Part shown: piece after piece, positions 20,406-28,441 of the stretch
Layout: every line of letters starts with the position of its first letter
How positions within the stretch are numbered: position 1 is the stretch's first letter
Source: Magallana gigas
Lineage: Eukaryota
Reading direction: 5' to 3'
Assembly (NCBI RefSeq): GCF_963853765.1
Contig: NC_088855.1
Coordinates: forward strand, 41,974,001 to 42,038,000
DNA length: 64,000 nt
Notes under the pieces: generated by a model
What the model was told of the DNA's origin: nothing
Database searches by the model: none
Seen by the model: the letters and a program-made list of their open reading frames with translations, nothing else
Program-made: the position numbers and the translations under genes

Positions 20406-23400
20406 ATGCTGTGGAAGATAATGAAGTTTTCAATAGGACTCTTTGTTTGTTTTGCGTGGTTTGCTCCCTTTGTGTTGGGGAACGGCTTTCTGAAGTCCCC
20501 CACCAGTCGTTCGTCTGTGTGGCGCTATTTTGGGGAGGCACCATGGGGAGATACTTTAACACAGAACACAGAGGATATGTCTTTGAATTGTGGAGGAACT
20601 TATGTAAGTTTTTTTTTATAAATTGTCGAAAAGTTCTTCCATAGATTGATATGAGCAGCACTTGCATTAAAATCCATTTTGAATACTGTAGTATTCAAAA
20701 TATTTACTTCGATCATATATCAAAGTATTTGAAGTTGGAAAACCTGATGTAGTAAAAAAGTTATTATGTTCTGTTCTTATTCCAAAACTGGGTTTGCAAA
20801 ATTGTTTTCAAAATTTGCTTACCTTTTTATTTTCAGTTCTTTTATTCACTAATATAAGCTTCTTGATTTTAGTCGGTAATATACATAGCATAGGACAAAA
20901 TTCTATTAAATAAAAAAACTGTCACTACATGTACCTATATCGGAAAGTTATTATTACTTTTAAAAGAATTGTTAAAGTAAACATATATGGATGATTTGAG
21001 TGAAACGGGCAATTACAAAACTGTTAAACTCTACCAAGATTTATCATCTAATTGTCATTGGAGAGGAGCATGTACATGTAAGCTGTAAGAACTTGTTTCC
21101 AATCCTCTTGTGTAATTTACACAATAAAACATGTTCAAATCAGATTATCTAATTGTTTCAAACATCGAACTTGTGAACATTGGTAAAGAAGATACTAGTA
21201 CTTTCTAATAGTTTTGTAATTTTATTTTGGTTAAGACTGATGGAGACCTGACGGGGAAATGCGGTCGTTGTGGGGATTACATCGGAGGAACAAGACCAAA
21301 CGAGGCTCCTAACGGACAATACGCCTCCAAAAAGTCGACGTACATCTACCGAGAGGGCGCTGTGGTCAATGTCACGGTCCAAGTCACAGCACGTGCTAAT
21401 GGCGGCTTTTTTAAGTTTAAGTTGTGTAAATCTGATGCTAGCACTGCTGCATCACAGGCTTGCTTCGACCAGAACCCGCTAAAGCTGGCTAATACCGCCG
21501 ACCAAACCATCATCCAGATTCCGGACATTGATGGGGATGTTGTCGTTCCGCTTCAGTTGCCAGCAGGACTGACATGTGACCAATGCGTCATGCAATGGAC
21601 ATGGGTTACTGGTGGGTTTCATTTTGAAAAAATTGAAATTCAGCAAATATCGTTGAAAAAAATTACTTATGATTATAATTAAGTATTATACTTAAGATTA
21701 CCTTAGTTACATTTTATTATTTACACGTTCATGTTATTCCTATCAGAAATGATCTGTATACTACATGTTTATAACCATAAAAACAAGGATGAAGGAAAAA
21801 GAAATGCATGTCTTTGTATTTTTCTTTTCAGCAAGAGACTGGCGATGCGCTAGTTTGAATGGTCAGTTAGTGTGTGGTATGGGATATGGAATGCAGCCCA
21901 CGTTTGTAAACTGCGCTGACTTCACCATTCTTGCCCAGGGAGCACCTGTTCCGGCGGGTTTCCATTGGCCAGATTATAACTCGGTATACGCCACCATTCA
22001 CGGGGGACATACTGGATCAGGGACGACACAAGGTGAATCCAAAACCTAGTTTACATTGATATCAAGGAATGAATTCATTGTATTCATAAACATAAATGTC
22101 GTCTGTTACATAATTTTAAGATAATCCTGTTTTAAGGTTTTTCGCTCTCAGCGGAAAACCTTACTATTATTTTGAAAATTTTTCAAATTTCTTCTTATTT
22201 TTTTTTCTTCTAGTTATATGCTATTTTTATTATAAGATTATACTATATTTTATTACTGACATTTTCAGCACCAGCACCCACAACATCTGGCTCTGTTGTT
22301 ATCGTCCCGACTACTGCTGCACCAACCACAGCGGCGCCACAGACAACCACCACTTTCCCTATCATTACGAATCCACCTACCACGACCGCGGCTCCAGTAA
22401 TCACTACGGGCTCCACTAGCGCTCCCCCAACCACCACCGATAAACTGATCATCGTCACGCCCACACCTGTAAACCCAATCTCCACATCCCAACAGCCGCC
22501 AGCCTCACTGACCACCACACCACCCCTACCTCTGTCCACAGAGAAACTGATCCCCGGCCCTGTGTTTCCCCCTGTAGCACCTATTCTTCCGGTCGGACCA
22601 GTTGTTGGGGCTGGTGGCGGTGTTTTGGGCGGTTTATCGTTCGGTAGTCTTATGGCACCCCTGGGACTAGGTTTAGGTGGACTTGTGCTTATGATGGCTA
22701 TGAATAGAAATCAAGGAGGGGGCGGCGTGGAGTATATTGATATCCCACCGATGGCAATGCCAGCTATTTCTCAACCAATGCAGCCCATGGTTGCCCCTCC
22801 ATACGCCCCATCCTTCGGTTACACAATGCTGCCAGCTCCAATCATTGTACCAGTGGAGCAACCCGCCCCTGTCAAAAAAGGATACGGAAAAGGTTACGGT
22901 AAACACCCAACCGATTATGGCAAAGGAACTGGCTATGGAAACAGCAATTACAGAGGATACGGGAATAAAAAAAGTTACGGTTCGGTTTTTGTGAACCCTG
23001 GGTATGGCTACAACAACGGACAGTACCAGCAGACATACAACCCGGCATCCTATAACCCGTCCTACAAACCCCCATCATCTTACGGCAGCAACAGCCGGCC
23101 CAACAGGGGAGACGAGCAGTTCTTTGAGCTCCCCAACAGCCACGCCTTCACTCGGATAGTGTTTGACGTAGAACCAGAAGTCAACAAAGTCCGGACACAG
23201 GAAACAGTAGAACAGAAGCCACGGAAAATCGACATCTCGGCTTTCAGTAAGAACTGTCCGATTTCAAAGCAGACGTGCAAACCTCGTTATGGCGCGAACG
23301 AGGCGACTGTGTACGGGAATGTGGACATTGTCAGTATGATATGTGAGCTCCACTGCTCTGACCGGAATCCTCACTGTCCGGAGCACATGTGCTCGTGCAC

Positions 23401-23473
23401 GTGCATCGAAGAAGCAGCCGACAACATAGCTCTGCAGGATAGAATATCTGCAGCAAGCCTGTTTGGAAAATAA
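20406..23473 (+). CDS. Secreted AA15/LPMO-fold (chitin-binding type-4-like) protein A lacking the His brace, followed by a Pro/Thr mucin linker, a Gly/Tyr-rich region and an 8-Cys C-terminal module, 659 aa. Exons 20406-20603, 21236-21611, 21832-22032, 22269-23473
   Basis: Signal peptide ending VLG|NGFLKSPTSRSSVWR, against the family consensus HGxLxxPxSRSSxWR. Also LNCGG, GKCGRCGD, YREGAVVNVTVQVT, FKFKLC, LQLPAGLTCDQCVMQWTWVTA and QPTFVNCAD. Intron phases 0,1,1 give a 1980-nt open frame. Confidence 0.9.
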
Positions 23474-24567
23474 TGGTTACCAATAAGTTCGTAGAATAAT
23501 TATATCTAAATCAACGCGGTAAATGCGTTAAAGAATTCAGTTTTCTTTCTAGGAAATTATACAGTATTTTGGATCCTTAATTGTAAAATACTATATGAAG
23601 AGACAATTTTTGCGGATAGGTATGCGATAAGATATTGGCAACCAAACAGATTGATATATACTTCAGTAATATGAACATTAACACCTACTGTGGAAAAATA
23701 TTTTTATTGCTATATCTTAAGTAATTAAACGGATTGGATTAAAACAATTTACTATTTAATTTATTAAAGTTTTCTTGTATAATATGCAATATGTTATTGA
23801 ACGATTTTGGATTGATTGTAGCTTAGAAGATTGAACCCCATACAGCGAGTGCCAAAAACAAGGTGGTTGGGTTCCATATTGTGTTTATACATGTATAATC
23901 TTACAAGAACTCCTGTAAAACCAGAGTTTTGGAGAAAAGTAGTGATTTTAATGCGAGTTCAAATTAAATATATTTTTGTTTGTTATAAGATTGAGGAAGA
24001 GGATTTGAACAAAGAGTTTTTGTAAAGCAACAGATTGTGTAACAAGCAATATGATCGTACTATGTTACAACGAATGCTATTTAAATAAATCGTTTTTCTG
24101 TTGTTAATAAATTTTAAACTAAAAAATTTTGTCCTATATTACACGTTGCACCTTTAGTTTAGGGAAGTCTGCGATTGATGAATGCACAATGTCTATATAA
24201 GCTGATTATTTCTGCCCTGTATTCTAATGGTGCCCATACCATCCCGGTTCCTGTATTCCTCATTGAGAATTTTTGAATTCACCATAACACGCACAAAGTT
24301 TGAACCACATCCGGGGAACTTTGTCATTTCCTATATCAGATAACGCGATGTTTGTAGCAAATATAATACATTCGTATACCTATGGAAATTCATTAACCTC
24401 TGAACTTATTGTAGTTCACCAATAAGATTACATCTTATGACTAAATGACGAAGAAAAAAGATATTTACCACTCCAACATTACTTATAGCAGATGGTTAAA
24501 ATGTCGCAGTAACCCATACTGAACACGCTTTATAATGGTTTAAAGGAAAAATCTTAAAAACCCAACC

Positions 24568-27500
24568 ATGGTGTTCCAAACGAAAGGACTAACATTCTAT
24601 GTGCTGGTAATTCTTGGCCTTATTGTCAGGAGTGATGCACAAGAATCGACTACTGAAACAAACAAAGCTGACCCACGTGCTTTTTTGAAATGCCCCACCG
24701 CGCGTGCAGCGACCTTTATGTACTTCTCGGACTCTTGGACCAGGGTCCCAGAGCCCAATACGGATTACGATTCTCTGAACTGTGGAAACGTCAAGGTAAT
24801 AATAACGTCATAGGAATGGTTAAGTGTTCGGGGTACAAACTAAACCACCCCCATATGTGTAGCTCGGGAAATATAAAAAAAGCCTTATTTACATGTGCAC
24901 TCATCATTGTTTCGGCAAAAGAGTTAATTTTTTACAAAGTGTTCGGACATAAACCGAAAAATTGATTGAAATCTAACATCGAAAAGATATCTTTGAACTA
25001 TTTCATTCAATTTCATTCCATTTCCAATGATTTTAGGGAACAACCGAATCATGGCAACTCTTATACCTAGTCTAAGTCAAAGCCCAAAAGTGCTATTATT
25101 TTACTAATACTTATTCATTCAGATACTCCGGTAAATCGTTAAGAGACCGCTGTAATGATATTTTCCATAACGTGCTCTACATGATTGGGCAATGCTAATG
25201 ATCTAGAAATCGGACTACCCCAGGGCATCCATCAATCAATTTTGGGAAGTGACTTGGTAGGACACACAACCTATTCAGTATGCGGGTACATGGTTTCATT
25301 GCTATAGAAGATCTAGACAAACGTTGTTCTTCAGCGCGACGCAAAAATTAGGCAAACATACCCAGATACCTGCGATTCGATGAAATGAATTGAAATTTTT
25401 CTACTATTTAATTTACATTACACTCTCTTTAAGATTTGCTTTACTTTACAACTAGTCTAATATAGAGAAGTTAAGTACAATGCAGGTGTTTAAAATATGT
25501 GTTCAAAGTCATATACATGCATGGACTTAAAGTATACACACGTATGTGAAAGTAAATTACATAATCATTATGTATATAAGAAAATATCAATGCCATGTTA
25601 GTATGATAATGCTATGTTAAATAATGCATGGAAACAATTTAAAAGCTTGGGGGACAATGACGACTACCAGTATATAGAATTGTTCTTCCTCCGAAGCCAA
25701 AAAAGCGGTGCGTCTGTGTTATCAATTAATCTAATAAATATGAAATAGTCTGAAAGAGTATACAAAATAATCTAAAAGAGTGTAAAATAATTTTAAAGAG
25801 TGCAAGTACTTTCTACTTTATGGTTTATAATTAAGCAAGTTGATAAAGTTCGGGTTGATTGTTTTACACATTACTTACCAAACATCCTCATTAATAAGTA
25901 GATGTGTTTAAACGGCTATAATATATGAAGGTAAATATTATAACATTAAAAATCTTTTTAAAAATATAAATCGAAAGTCAACATCTAATGTAAACACTAA
26001 ACAATGCCTTTCACTTGATGTCTCTAGATACCAAACGGAGATCTGGAAGGAAAATGCGGAGTATGTGGGGACTACTACAATGGACCCCGACACAATGAAG
26101 TTCCGAATGGAAAGTATGCCTCCATTCGATACCCCACCTATGTCTATCGGGAGGGCTCGGTCATTAACGTGACTGTAGAAGTATCTGAAAACGGCAACGG
26201 TGGATACTTCATGTTTAAGCTGTGTGACTCGGGCGATGCTCAACTCCAGGAAAAACAAAGCTGCTTCGACAACACGGTGCTTAGTCTAGCGAGGTCTCCA
26301 AACGTGAAGAAGATTTATGTTCCCAAGGTTAATGCCTCCAATGACATCGTGGTCCCCCTGCAGCTACCCGATGGCTTTGAGTGTAAACTGTGTACCATGC
26401 AGTGGACTTGGGTCACCAGTGAGTATAGGAGAACACACTACAGACTTAGCAGAATAAAGACAAAACACCATGGAATACTAGTATCTAAATACAACAGCCA
26501 AAAGAAATACCATATAATATTACACCCAGCATATTGCATAGAAAACATTATACATGTACATGTTGTCGGAACTAAAAAAACAAAACAAAAACAAAACAAC
26601 GACAAAAACAATACAGTATTTATAAAGAACAGATGCTACACGTTATTATGCATATTGAAGAAAATGAAATCATGTCTATAATAAAAGAAACCTCAATGCT
26701 GTATCATTATTAATCAGCCAGAATGTACAAAATGTTACCGAAGACAAACTTTTCTTTACAGATATTGATGTAGGATGTCAAGTGATTGAAGGTGAACGTA
26801 TTTGCGGACAAGGAATTGGTCCGCAGACGACTCTGGTCAACTGCGCCGACATCTCCATAATTTCAAAGTCCATCGATATTCCAGAAAGTTTTCCATGGCC
26901 AGATTTTACGTCTAAGTATGACAGCATGGCACATAAAGGTTAGATACTGGTATTGCATTGTCGGTTTGGCACGCACATTATAATTTTTGATTCCAAGATG
27001 TTTTTCTTCACCTGTTGTAACTTTTCAAATAGATGATGACCATAACAGAACAGCAGTGGACCCACCATTCCGTCCCCGAGTAATAGAGAGAATAAAGGAC
27101 GATGATACTCCAACCACCACAAAGAAACCACCACCCGTTCTTCCAGTGTTTCCAAAAATAGAAAACCCTTACAACGGAAGAAAACCCACAATACCAGACA
27201 TATCGGACAAACTGTTGAAACCCGATCAACCAGTCCCCGCCAAGAAGCCCAAACTAGACATTAGAGATTACAAGAAGACTTTTGGGGGGTTAGGTCTTGG
27301 ACTGTTGGAAATACTGCTCCCGGCGGGCCTTCTTCTGGGGTTCGGGGGGATGCTCTCTGACCGTCTGGAGGATCGACGCAGACTCAACGCACAACCAGGG
27401 TTCTTACTTAATGGTGGCGTCGGTCTTAGTCCGGTTGCTGCTGAACATGGAGTGTTAATTGGTGAGCAGATTTTACCCTTTGGTGCATCGGCAGCCGCCG

Positions 27501-28441
27501 CTGGGGGTCTTGCGGGTGGTGCTATCAGGACAGGAGTACCTGGTGCAGGTGCTGTACCGGTAGCTGGCCTCTCTCCAGTTGTCACTGGACTGGATTTCAA
27601 TGACGCGCAGCTTCAACAGATCATCCCGTTGATACCCATAATATCCACGCCAGAGGCACACCAATTGATTCCAAAGTCATTTCCGGACAGCAGTAGATTA
27701 GGTTACTTGATACCGCTAATTGTAGAACGAAGACGTCTTGTGCAAATCTTCCCGCATCTCACTCCCCACCAGATAACACAAATGCACCTGCAGTACAGAA
27801 CAATGCAGAGACAAGGACGAATAGGAGGCGGGATCCAGGGTCAAAATGGAATCAATGGCGCAAATCAAGGTCAAAATGGTTTTGGGGGCATTTCGCAAGG
27901 TCAAGGAGGTTTTGGCGGGTCTTTCCAAGGTCAAGGTGGAGTTGTAGGAGGGGCTAATATCAATGCCATTCAAAATGCCCAATATCAGTCCGGGAACCAA
28001 CAGTGGTATTCTAACAATGTCCAAACTAATCAGAATTCTAGGTTCTTTGAATTGCCCCAAGATCATTCATTTTCAACCGATATAAATAATATCAATTCAA
28101 CCAATTCTGGCTCAAGACCGTCACGTGGTGACATTGCTAACCCAGAATTTGAATTTGACAGAGAACCGGGTGTTTTGGTCGAAAGAGAGAGTCGCAAGAG
28201 AGTATCTCCTTACAGCGAAAATTGTCCACCTGAAAAGCAAATTTGTAGAAGTAAGTTTACCTCTAAAGAACCCACGATCTACGGGACCATTTCCATCATG
28301 GAGATGATCTGTGAACTTGAGTGTGAGGATGGGAAGCTTTCCTGTCCGGCGAATATTTGTATCTGCGCATGCCCAGAAGTTGACGACGCCTCGCTGTTAG
28401 AAATACTGGAATCCTTAGACGATCGGTCACGGGTGGCTTGA
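24568..28441 (+). CDS. Secreted AA15/LPMO-fold protein B, tandem paralog of A, also His-less, with Pro-rich and Gly/Ala/Gln-rich linkers and the same 8-Cys module, 734 aa. Exons 24568-24795, 26028-26418, 26762-26938, 27033-28441
   Basis: Signal peptide, then RAFLKCPTARAA, LNCG, GKCGVCGD, YREGSVINVTVEV, YFMFKLC, LQLPDGFECKLCTMQWTWVT and GPQTTLVNCAD. Intron positions and phases (0,1,1) are the same as in paralog A. 2205-nt open frame. Confidence 0.9.

What the first reader, a model, noticed from the sequence alone, without database searches (positions are those of the whole stretch)
20406..26938. Tandem pair of AA15/LPMO-fold proteins that have both lost the copper histidine brace
Seen: protein A begins NGFLKSP after the predicted signal cleavage, where the family has H-G-x-L-x-x-P. 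It reads VTARANGGFF where AA15 has TANHxGYF. Protein B has R at the His1-equivalent position, VSENGNGGYF at the second His position, and L instead of F in Q-x-x-F-x-NCAD. The ten domain cysteines and the fold motifs are retained in both. Established: LPMO activity needs the N-terminal His1 amine plus a second His; His1-to-Arg AA9 variants that do not bind copper are known in fungi. Inference: these are maintained pseudo-enzymes, repurposed as non-catalytic chitin-binding or scaffold modules, for example in shell, periostracum or mucus matrix.
Basis: partly seen in the sequence, partly recalled or inferred. Interest (0 to 1): 0.8.

Follow-up and report, generated by a model that had tools for sequence, protein, structure and literature searches.

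The report
Dead-site LPMO-like oyster gene pair
Two neighbouring oyster genes encode secreted proteins that keep the fold of a copper-dependent chitin-cutting enzyme (AA15 LPMO) but have lost its copper-holding residues. They are expressed, strongly conserved, and sit in an old mollusc clade whose limpet member is an abundant shell-matrix protein, so they look repurposed rather than broken.

Summary
Two four-exon genes lie on the + strand: A (20406-23473, 659 aa) and B (24568-28441, 734 aa). Each encodes a signal peptide, an AA15/LPMO_10-fold domain, a long low-complexity linker and a C-terminal 6-Cys module.

- **Copper site:** A has Asn at His1 and RANG at His2. B has Arg at His1 behind an 11-residue extension, NGNG at His2, and Leu for the axial Phe. 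Both also lack the Glu of the QE-x-F motif. A has no histidine from Met1 to past NCAD.
- **Gene models:** RNA contigs confirm the splice junctions, and no alternative exon supplies a His.
- **Conservation:** Orthologs in Crassostrea virginica and Saccostrea keep the same substitutions and gene order. dN/dS of the LPMO-like domain is 0.015 (A) and 0.09 (B).
- **Fold:** AlphaFold models match TdAA15A (TM 0.86).
- **Phylogeny:** A and B group with scallop, Patella and Lottia proteins in an all-His-less clade. The Lottia member is LUSP-14, a major shell-matrix protein. His-less PF03067 proteins are also in the Tridacna shell proteome.

Best reading: maintained pseudo-LPMOs used as matrix or scaffold proteins. 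Chitin binding is untested. The scan reported the same kind of protein at two other loci of this genome.

The parts
20406..20603 (+). Gene A exon 1: signal peptide (res 1-25) and start of the LPMO-like domain; Asn26 (20481-20483) at the His1 position
   Evidence: ORF and GT donor; junction 20603>21236 in RNA contigs; 66/66 aa identical in Saccostrea
21236..21611 (+). Gene A exon 2: core of the LPMO-like domain; RANG (21392-21403) replaces the His2 loop
   Evidence: Pfam LPMO_10 E 3e-10; 5MSZ E 1.1e-21, His91 aligned to Asn
21832..22032 (+). Gene A exon 3: end of the domain; Trp195, QPTF-VNCAD (21894-21905: Glu to Pro, axial Phe kept)
   Evidence: Junctions 21611>21832 and 22032>22269 in RNA contigs; column table
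22269..23473 (+). Gene A exon 4: Thr/Pro-rich mucin-like linker, Gly/Leu hydrophobic stretch (22619-22702), Gly/Tyr/Pro-rich region, RGD (23105-23113), 6-Cys module (23276-23404), stop
   Evidence: Composition, hydropathy and motif coordinates; 6-Cys pattern shared with canonical AA15 proteins
23474..24107 (+). Gene A 3' UTR
   Evidence: A 2827-nt RNA contig runs through exons 1-4 to 24107 (record 6)
24568..24795 (+). Gene B exon 1: signal peptide, 11-residue N-terminal extension, Arg37 (24676-24678) at the His1 position, extra Cys42 (24691-24693); 5' UTR from about 24490
   Evidence: junction 24795>26028 in RNA contigs and contig end at 24490
26028..26418 (+). Gene B exon 2: core of the LPMO-like domain; NGNG (26190-26201) replaces the His2 loop
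   Evidence: Pfam LPMO_10 E 2.9e-6; column table
26762..26938 (+). Gene B exon 3: Val210 at the Trp166-equivalent, QTTL-VNCAD (26824-26835: Glu to Thr, axial Phe to Leu)
   Evidence: junctions match the independent models P0008, P0009 and P0012. No RNA junction was seen for this exon because it lies outside the stretch laid.
27033..28441 (+). Gene B exon 4: Pro/Lys/Asp-rich linker, hydrophobic stretch (27281-27355), Gly/Gln/Asn-rich region, RGD (28124-28132), 6-Cys module (28244-28372), stop
   Evidence: Phase-1 acceptor at 27032/27033 agrees with P0008, P0009 and P0012

Best explanation
A and B are catalytically dead descendants of an AA15 lytic polysaccharide monooxygenase that carried the usual C-terminal 6-Cys module. 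An ancestor of bivalves and gastropods lost both copper-binding histidines. The oyster lineage later duplicated the gene in tandem. The rigid, disulfide-stapled LPMO fold is kept as a binding module at the N-terminus of a long, partly mucin-like and partly Gly/Tyr/Gln-rich secreted protein. That protein works as a structural or organising component of the chitin-containing extracellular matrix made by the mantle (shell or periostracum). Shown here: the fold, loss of the whole first and second copper shell, expression, synteny, purifying selection, and clade membership with a proven shell-matrix protein. Inferred: no copper and no oxidative activity; the ligand (chitin is most likely, through the flat face and/or the 6-Cys module); the tissue and matrix location of A and B themselves.
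For: - **Homology and fold:** Pfam LPMO_10; 5MSZ E 1e-21; AlphaFold pLDDT 90.4 and 84.4, with 5MSZ the top Foldseek hit at TMt 0.86 for both.
- **Active site gone:** His1, His2 and the QE Glu are lost in both, plus the axial Phe in B. A has no His in residues 1-230. Glu is present in 116 of 118 His-bearing relatives but in only 3 of 20 His-less ones.
- **Real genes:** RNA contigs join A exons 1-4 and B exons 1-2 exactly as modelled.
- **Old and maintained:** identical substitutions in C. virginica and Saccostrea orthologs. The gene order 620-aa gene / A / B / Reeler is kept. dN/dS is 0.015 (A domain) and 0.09 (B domain) at dS above 1.
- **Clade:** A+B 100/97, plus scallops 97/82, plus Lottia and Patella 96/89, all His-less, with the active-site columns left out of the tree.
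- **Matrix link:** the Lottia member, Lotgi1|226726 (LUSP-14), is a major shell protein. Tridacna shell proteins Tcr_714405 and Tcr_684209 are His-less PF03067 proteins, and one MS peptide spans the mutated His2 site. An LPMO_10 protein is listed among the M. gigas proteins compared with the shell proteome. Two 'chitin-binding type-4' genes and a chitin synthase mark a mantle cell type in M. gigas.
- **C-terminal module:** it fits C-x15-21-C-x3-C-x6-C-x4-C-x-C, the motif of insect LPMO15-1 and most canonical AA15 relatives.
Against: - Neither A nor B has been shown in an oyster shell proteome. The M. gigas LPMO_10 entry (XP_011435856.2) and the two mantle markers could not be mapped to these loci.
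- Chitin binding is untested. The Tyr24-equivalent is Thr in both, and B also lost the Trp166-equivalent, so the canonical substrate face is altered.
- The replacing residues differ between lineages of the clade (N, R, Q, E at His1), so no common new site is evident.
- A conserved hydrophobic stretch (Kyte-Doolittle 1.8-1.9) could be a transmembrane helix, which would make these cell-surface rather than matrix proteins.
- A's domain is conserved far more tightly (dN 0.018) than a generic carbohydrate-binding module would need, which hints at a specific partner.
Confidence: 0.6

Rival explanations
1. The dead LPMO fold no longer binds chitin. It has been retooled as a protein-binding, mineral-binding or cell-adhesion module, and the proteins act as matricellular or adhesion factors through the conserved RGD.
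For: Flat-face aromatic positions are changed (Tyr24-equivalent to Thr in both; Trp to Val in B). A's domain is extremely constrained (dN 0.018 at dS 1.2), as expected for a specific protein partner. [RK]P[NS]RGD is kept in both paralogs in three oyster genera. B has an unpaired Cys beside the former copper site.
Against: Relatives in the same clade are annotated and discussed as chitin-binding shell proteins. The 6-Cys module is the one that accompanies chitin-active insect LPMO15-1. RGD is absent from the scallop and limpet relatives. A tripeptide alone is weak evidence.
Confidence: 0.2
2. A and B are type I membrane proteins. The pseudo-LPMO domain stands on a mucin stalk outside the mantle cell, the Gly/Leu stretch spans the membrane, and the rest is cytoplasmic. 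They would be cell-surface chitin tethers or sensors rather than deposited matrix proteins.
For: Internal hydrophobic stretches score 1.8-1.9 in both paralogs and also occur in the scallop relatives. Arg-rich sequence follows the stretch in B. A Tridacna relative is listed as 'trans-membrane: yes'. Chitin synthase is co-expressed with two chitin-binding type-4 genes in one mantle cell type.
Against: The 6-Cys module would then be cytoplasmic, although its homologs in canonical AA15 proteins are extracellular disulfide modules. The stretches contain Pro, many Gly and, in B, a Glu. MS peptides from a similar Gly-rich region of Tridacna Tcr_684209 were recovered from shell. No dedicated topology predictor was available.
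Confidence: 0.15
3. The proteins are still metallo- or redox-active and use ligands other than the histidine brace.
For: B has a free Cys42 five residues from the His1 position and one His (His98). LPMO-like folds have been reused for copper handling, as in the X325 family (PMC7924993).
Against: A has no His in the whole core domain and no unpaired Cys. The second-shell Glu is lost as well. The replacing residues are not conserved across the clade. B carries an N-terminal extension, so no free amine sits at position 1.
Confidence: 0.04
4. The His losses are assembly or annotation artefacts, or the genes are recently decaying pseudogenes.
For: None found.
Against: RNA contigs from several studies match the models. 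The reading frames are intact. The same substitutions are found in three genera. dN/dS is far below 1.
Confidence: 0.01

Closest known systems
TdAA15A (PDB 5MSZ) and insect group I LPMO15-1 (AA15 LPMOs)
   Same: Same fold (Foldseek TMt 0.86, 33-34% identity), the same ten cysteines, the same NCAD motif, and a signal peptide ending at the homologous position in A. The same type of C-terminal 6-Cys motif (C-x15-C-x3-C-x6-9-C-x4-C-x-C) as LPMO15-1.
   Different: No His1, no His91-equivalent and no Glu of QE-x-F/Y; B also lacks the axial aromatic residue. A 330-400-residue low-complexity linker is inserted between the domain and a single 6-Cys module. The first loop of that module is 21 residues long, and the Trp before the second Cys is Ile.
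Lottia gigantea LUSP-14 (Lotgi1|226726, LOTGIDRAFT_226726), a shell-matrix 'chitin_binding_3' protein
   Same: Same His-less clade (96/89 support). Asn at His1, as in A. Secreted. Followed by a Thr/Ala/Pro-rich tail.
   Different: Only 298 aa, with no long linker, no RGD and no 6-Cys module. Keeps the QE Glu. Arg at the His2 position. Its presence in shell is shown by proteomics; that of A and B is not.
Tridacna crocea shell proteins Tcr_714405 and Tcr_684209 (PF03067)
   Same: His-less AA15-like domains (VDG|NALLRP with INANQGGYFEF; SA|RGRMADP) followed by T-, G- and P-rich low complexity. Found in shell by MS.
   Different: From a heterodont clam and, by motif, closer to another His-less cluster (the P0078/P0107 type). 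Their place in the tree was not tested because the sequences are held only as supplement text.
Fungal Arg-AA9 (Frandsen et al. [quoted passage not shown]
   Same: An LPMO-fold protein with His1 replaced, as in B where it is Arg, and conserved as a subgroup.
   Different: A different LPMO family (AA9) and kingdom, a single-domain protein, and function unknown. The paper is not held in the library, so anything about it beyond its title is from my own knowledge.
X325/Bim1 LPMO-like proteins
   Same: LPMO fold reused for a non-polysaccharide-cleaving role.
   Different: X325 keeps a copper-binding His brace (PMC7924993); A and B have none.

Membership tests
AA15 LPMO (CAZy auxiliary activity family 15) | Sequence and fold homology to the AA15/LPMO_10 domain | tested here: met
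   Pfam PF03067 E 3e-10 (A) and 2.9e-6 (B); 5MSZ phmmer E 1.1e-21; Foldseek 5MSZ E 1.2e-18 and 4.7e-16, TMt 0.86
AA15 LPMO (CAZy auxiliary activity family 15) | His as first residue of the mature protein (N-terminal amine plus imidazole ligand) | tested here: not met
   A: VLG|N; B: Arg37 behind an 11-residue extension. No His anywhere in exon 1 of either gene. The cleavage site is inferred from the -3/-1 rule and homology, not from a predictor.
AA15 LPMO (CAZy auxiliary activity family 15) | Second copper-binding His (His91 of TdAA15A, motif T-A-N-H-x-G-Y-F) | tested here: not met
   A TARANGGFF and B SENGNGGYF; His91 aligns with Asn
AA15 LPMO (CAZy auxiliary activity family 15) | Axial Tyr/Phe and the preceding Glu (Q-E-x-F/Y-x-N-C-A-D) | tested here: not met
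   A QPTF (Phe kept, Glu to Pro); B QTTL (both lost). Glu is present in 116 of 118 His-bearing relatives. Its role as a second-shell residue is my inference.
AA15 LPMO (CAZy auxiliary activity family 15) | Ten conserved cysteines (five disulfides) | tested here: met
   10 in A; 10 plus 1 extra (Cys42) in B
AA15 LPMO (CAZy auxiliary activity family 15) | Copper binding and oxidative cleavage of chitin or cellulose | not testable with these tools
   Needs recombinant protein, ITC/EPR and product analysis
Pseudoenzyme (maintained, catalytically dead homolog) | Catalytic residues lost, but the gene is expressed, intact and under purifying selection | tested here: met
   (dN/dS 0.015 and 0.09)
Mollusc shell-matrix 'chitin_binding_3' proteins (LUSP-14 clade) | Phylogenetic membership in the clade holding Lottia LUSP-14 | tested here: met
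   Careful ML tree with active-site columns removed: 9-row all-His-less clade, 96/89; identity of P0152
Mollusc shell-matrix 'chitin_binding_3' proteins (LUSP-14 clade) | Protein recovered from shell matrix; mantle expression | not testable with these tools
   Shown only for relatives. The M. gigas entries could not be mapped to A or B. The runs laid are coded and carry no tissue label.
AA15-associated C-terminal 6-Cys module (insect LPMO15-1 type) | Pattern C-x15-C-x3-C-x6-9-C-x4-C-x-C at the C-terminus | tested here: met
   A and B fit with a longer first loop (C-x21-C-x3-C-x6-C-x4-C-x-C, then -x-C). A relaxed version of the pattern (first loop 12-24 residues) matches about 70 canonical relatives; motif as described in PMC9156745. 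There is no Pfam model.

The most novel reading that the evidence does not exclude
The LUSP-14 clade marks an ancient conversion, before bivalves and gastropods split, of a chitin-cutting oxidase into a chitin-organising matrix protein. In oysters the tandem pair A/B is made by the same mantle cells as chitin synthase. It would tether nascent chitin to the cell surface and integrins (RGD) through a membrane-proximal hydrophobic segment, as a mollusc counterpart of insect chitin organisers. Mollusc 'AA15 counts' would then overstate oxidative capacity.
Probability: 0.2. Interest if true: 0.75.

Novelty: new variant of a known kind. Interest (0 to 1): 0.55.

Why it matters
LPMO research treats the histidine brace as the signature of the superfamily, and animal AA15 genes are usually counted as enzymes. 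Here a well-supported, ancient mollusc clade keeps the fold but none of the copper site. At least four further His-less clusters appear among the 150 closest relatives.

Biomineralisation papers already list members as 'chitin-binding domain 3' shell proteins without noting that they are dead LPMOs. LPMO papers do not mention them.

Linking the two fields gives three things:
- a natural experiment on what the LPMO fold does without copper;
- a caution for CAZyme annotation in molluscs;
- concrete candidates (A ultra-conserved, B faster-evolving) for testing how chitin scaffolds are organised during shell formation.

Tried and rejected
- **Short-exon searches:** phmmer of exon 1 or exon 3 alone against PDB gave only noise because the pieces are too short.
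- **Word search:** a search with the LPMO-like region of P0002 added no new relatives. Searches with exon 4 were swamped by low-complexity words.
- **Literature look-ups:** LOC, XP, UniProt and CGI identifiers of the orthologs occur in no held paper. The Arg-AA9 paper is not held.
- **Spaetzle-like impression:** my first impression that the C-terminal Cys-rich domain of the Dreissena-type His-less proteins is Spaetzle-like is not supported by Pfam and is dropped.
- **Independent-pairs test:** a test of 'His loss goes with Glu loss' is void. I indexed the wrong column, and only 2 starred independent pairs exist, so it could not reach significance anyway. The raw counts stand, but they are not phylogenetically independent.
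- **Other paralogs:** none exists in the window. tblastn finds only A and B.
- **Tools lacking:** no SignalP or TM predictor was available. Model coordinates are not exposed, so the former copper face could not be inspected.
- **B exon 3/4 junction:** it lies outside the 6000 bases laid, so it rests on splice phase and three independent gene models.


Full report
**Gene models.** The region holds two genes on the + strand, each with four exons.
- A: 20406-20603, 21236-21611, 21832-22032, 22269-23473 (659 aa).
- B: 24568-24795, 26028-26418, 26762-26938, 27033-28441 (734 aa).
- All introns are GT..AG, with phases 0, 1, 1 in both genes.
- The models agree residue for residue at the junctions with independent models: C. 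virginica LOC111133396 and Saccostrea LOC133206366 for A; a M. gigas UniRef entry, transcript-derived proteins and Saccostrea LOC134252020 for B.
- RNA-library contigs give the junctions 20603>21236, 21611>21832, 22032>22269 and 24795>26028.
- One 2827-nt contig joins A exons 1-4 and runs to 24107. No other splice form was seen.
- The B exon 2/3 and 3/4 junctions lie outside the 6000 bases I was allowed to lay. They rest on splice phase and the three independent models.
- B is 99% identical in the domain to the M. gigas entry, so the window is Magallana gigas or a very close relative.

**The observation.**
- Pfam LPMO_10 hits exon 2 of both genes.
- PDB phmmer finds only TdAA15A (5MSZ, E 1.1e-21) and aligns its His91 with the Asn of A's ARANGGFF.
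- An exhaustive phmmer of the A-type domain gave 1420 relatives. I tabulated the active-site columns in the best 150. The family consensus is xG|HGxLxxP, TANHxGYF, QExF/YxNCAD.
- A reads VLG|NGFLKSP, TARANGGFF, QPTFVNCAD.
- B reads ...ADPRAFLKCP, SENGNGGYF, QTTLVNCAD. Its Arg sits 12 residues after the likely signal cleavage, so it has no free amine at that position.
The Glu of QE is Pro in A and Thr in B. The Tyr24-equivalent is Thr in both. The Trp/Tyr166-equivalent is Trp in A but Val in B.
- A has no histidine in residues 1-230. B has one, His98.
- The ten family cysteines are kept. B adds an eleventh, Cys42, five residues after the Arg.

**Not error, not decay.**
- The same substitutions occur in C. 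virginica, Saccostrea cucullata and S. echinata.
- Nei-Gojobori estimates against C. virginica:

| Region | dN | dS | dN/dS |
|---|---|---|---|
| A LPMO-like domain | 0.018 | 1.19 | 0.015 |
| B LPMO-like domain | 0.151 | 1.61 | 0.09 |
| Exon 4 (both genes) | 0.18-0.22 | 1.33-1.71 | 0.13 |

- dS is near saturation, so the ratios are rough, but the direction is not in doubt.
- A's exon 1 is 66/66 identical in Saccostrea, signal peptide included, at dS about 1.2. I cannot explain this.

**Fold.** AlphaFold2 with a 69-70-row alignment gave pLDDT 90.4 (A type, C. virginica ortholog, 96% identical to A) and 84.4 (B type). For both, 5MSZ is the top Foldseek hit, with E 1.2e-18 and 4.7e-16, TMt 0.86, and rmsd 1.9 and 2.8 Å. 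The first six residues of B's N-terminal extension have pLDDT under 50. Coordinates are not exposed, so the former copper face could not be inspected.

**Phylogeny.**
- I ran a careful ML tree (LG+C20 PMSF) of 57 domains with the His1, His2 and QExF columns removed.
- It groups A with B (100/97), then two scallop proteins (97/82), then Lottia LOTGIDRAFT_226726 and Patella 'mucin-2' (96/89). All nine rows lack both His.
- The bootstrap had not fully converged.
- The loss therefore most simply predates the bivalve-gastropod split. The A/B duplication falls after the oyster-scallop split and before Crassostrea/Saccostrea diverged.
- At least four other His-less clusters exist among the relatives: the Dreissena type, Mytilus/Potamilus, Haliotis and Sinanodonta.
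- Glu of QE is present in 116 of 118 His-bearing rows and 3 of 20 His-less rows. These counts are not independent, and a formal pair test had no power.

**Architecture.**
- After the domain, A has a Thr/Pro-rich (23% and 22%) mucin-like stretch. B has a Pro/Asp/Lys-rich one.
- Both then have a Gly/Leu hydrophobic stretch (Kyte-Doolittle 1.8-1.9).
- Next come a Gly/Tyr/Pro (A) or Gly/Gln/Asn (B) low-complexity region and [RK]P[NS]RGD, kept in all oyster orthologs.
- Last is a Cys module, C-x21-C-x3-C-x6-C-x4-C-x-C-x-C.
- That module fits the 6-Cys repeat described for insect LPMO15-1 (PMC9156745). The same type of motif follows about 70 of the canonical relatives.
- A and B thus derive from the ordinary 'AA15 + 6-Cys' layout by loss of the copper site and insertion of a long linker.

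**What relatives do.**
- Lotgi1|226726 (LUSP-14, 'chitin_binding_3 domain') is a major protein of the acid-soluble Lottia shell matrix (PMC3374290, PMC4094399).
- The Tridacna crocea shell proteome holds two PF03067 proteins. Their printed sequences read VDG|NALLRP with INANQGGYFEF, and SA|RGRMADP. One MS peptide covers the mutated His2 site (PMC8217771 supplement).
- An LPMO_10 protein is among the M. gigas proteins matched between mantle transcriptome and shell proteome (PMC11464482).
- Two 'chitin-binding type-4' genes plus a chitin synthase mark a mantle cell type in a M. gigas single-nucleus atlas.
- None of these papers mentions the histidine brace. The AA15 founding paper and reviews do not mention His-less members.
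- I could not map the M. gigas entries to A or B.

**Conclusion.** These are maintained pseudo-LPMOs of a mollusc shell-matrix clade. The ligand (chitin or something else), the topology (secreted matrix protein or membrane-anchored) and the tissue remain inferences. Two earlier follow-ups in this scan reached the same kind of conclusion for other loci of this genome. The new points here are:
- the tandem pair and its asymmetric evolution (A ultra-conserved, B faster and further altered);
- the tie to LUSP-14;
- the shared 6-Cys module and RGD.

Noticed in passing
L002:5156-5353 (Saccostrea cucullata): The NCBI model LOC134252039 (P0003) lacks the true first exon of the A ortholog. That exon lies about 1.4 kb upstream of the annotated gene start and is 66/66 aa identical to the window's exon 1.
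   Followed up: yes
window 20406-20480: The signal peptide of A is fully conserved across three oyster genera although synonymous sites are near saturation. B's signal peptide drifts normally. This may be a retained N-terminal anchor or a second function.
   Followed up: partly
P0013 (Lingula anatina LOC106150787), residues about 530-676: The brachiopod model carries two AA15 domains. The first has both His. The second reads QGNGRLVSPP and TANKLGGW, so it lacks both. His-less AA15 domains may therefore extend beyond molluscs, or the model may fuse two genes.
   Followed up: no
P0078, P0085, P0107 (Dreissena polymorpha LOC127877526 and two transcript-derived proteins): A separate His-less AA15 cluster (Gln at His1, Asn at His2, QT for QE) carries a well-conserved Cys-rich C-terminal domain of about 170 aa with no Pfam match.
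   Followed up: partly
P0016, P0037, P0122: Database names of relatives are misleading products of low-complexity matches: 'PPE family protein PPE24' (scallop), 'mucin-2' (Patella) and 'nuclear pore complex protein Nup98-Nup96-like' (Haliotis). The scallop protein is so diverged that Pfam LPMO_10 no longer reports it at E 0.01.
   Followed up: yes
window 21078-21117 and 22131-22213 (introns 1 and 3 of A): Short intronic segments have very high RNA depth and loose ends on both sides in several runs. They are probably copies of a small repeat transcribed elsewhere.
   Followed up: no
window 21368-21376 (A Asn111) and B Asn123: An N-glycosylation sequon (NVT or NVS) about ten residues before the former His2 is kept in A, B and both scallop relatives, but not in the limpet members.
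   Followed up: no
P0015 (ant Odontomachus brunneus LOC116840526): A two-domain insect AA15 protein. The first domain has Tyr at His1 but keeps His2, and the second domain is canonical. This is a partial loss outside molluscs.
   Followed up: no
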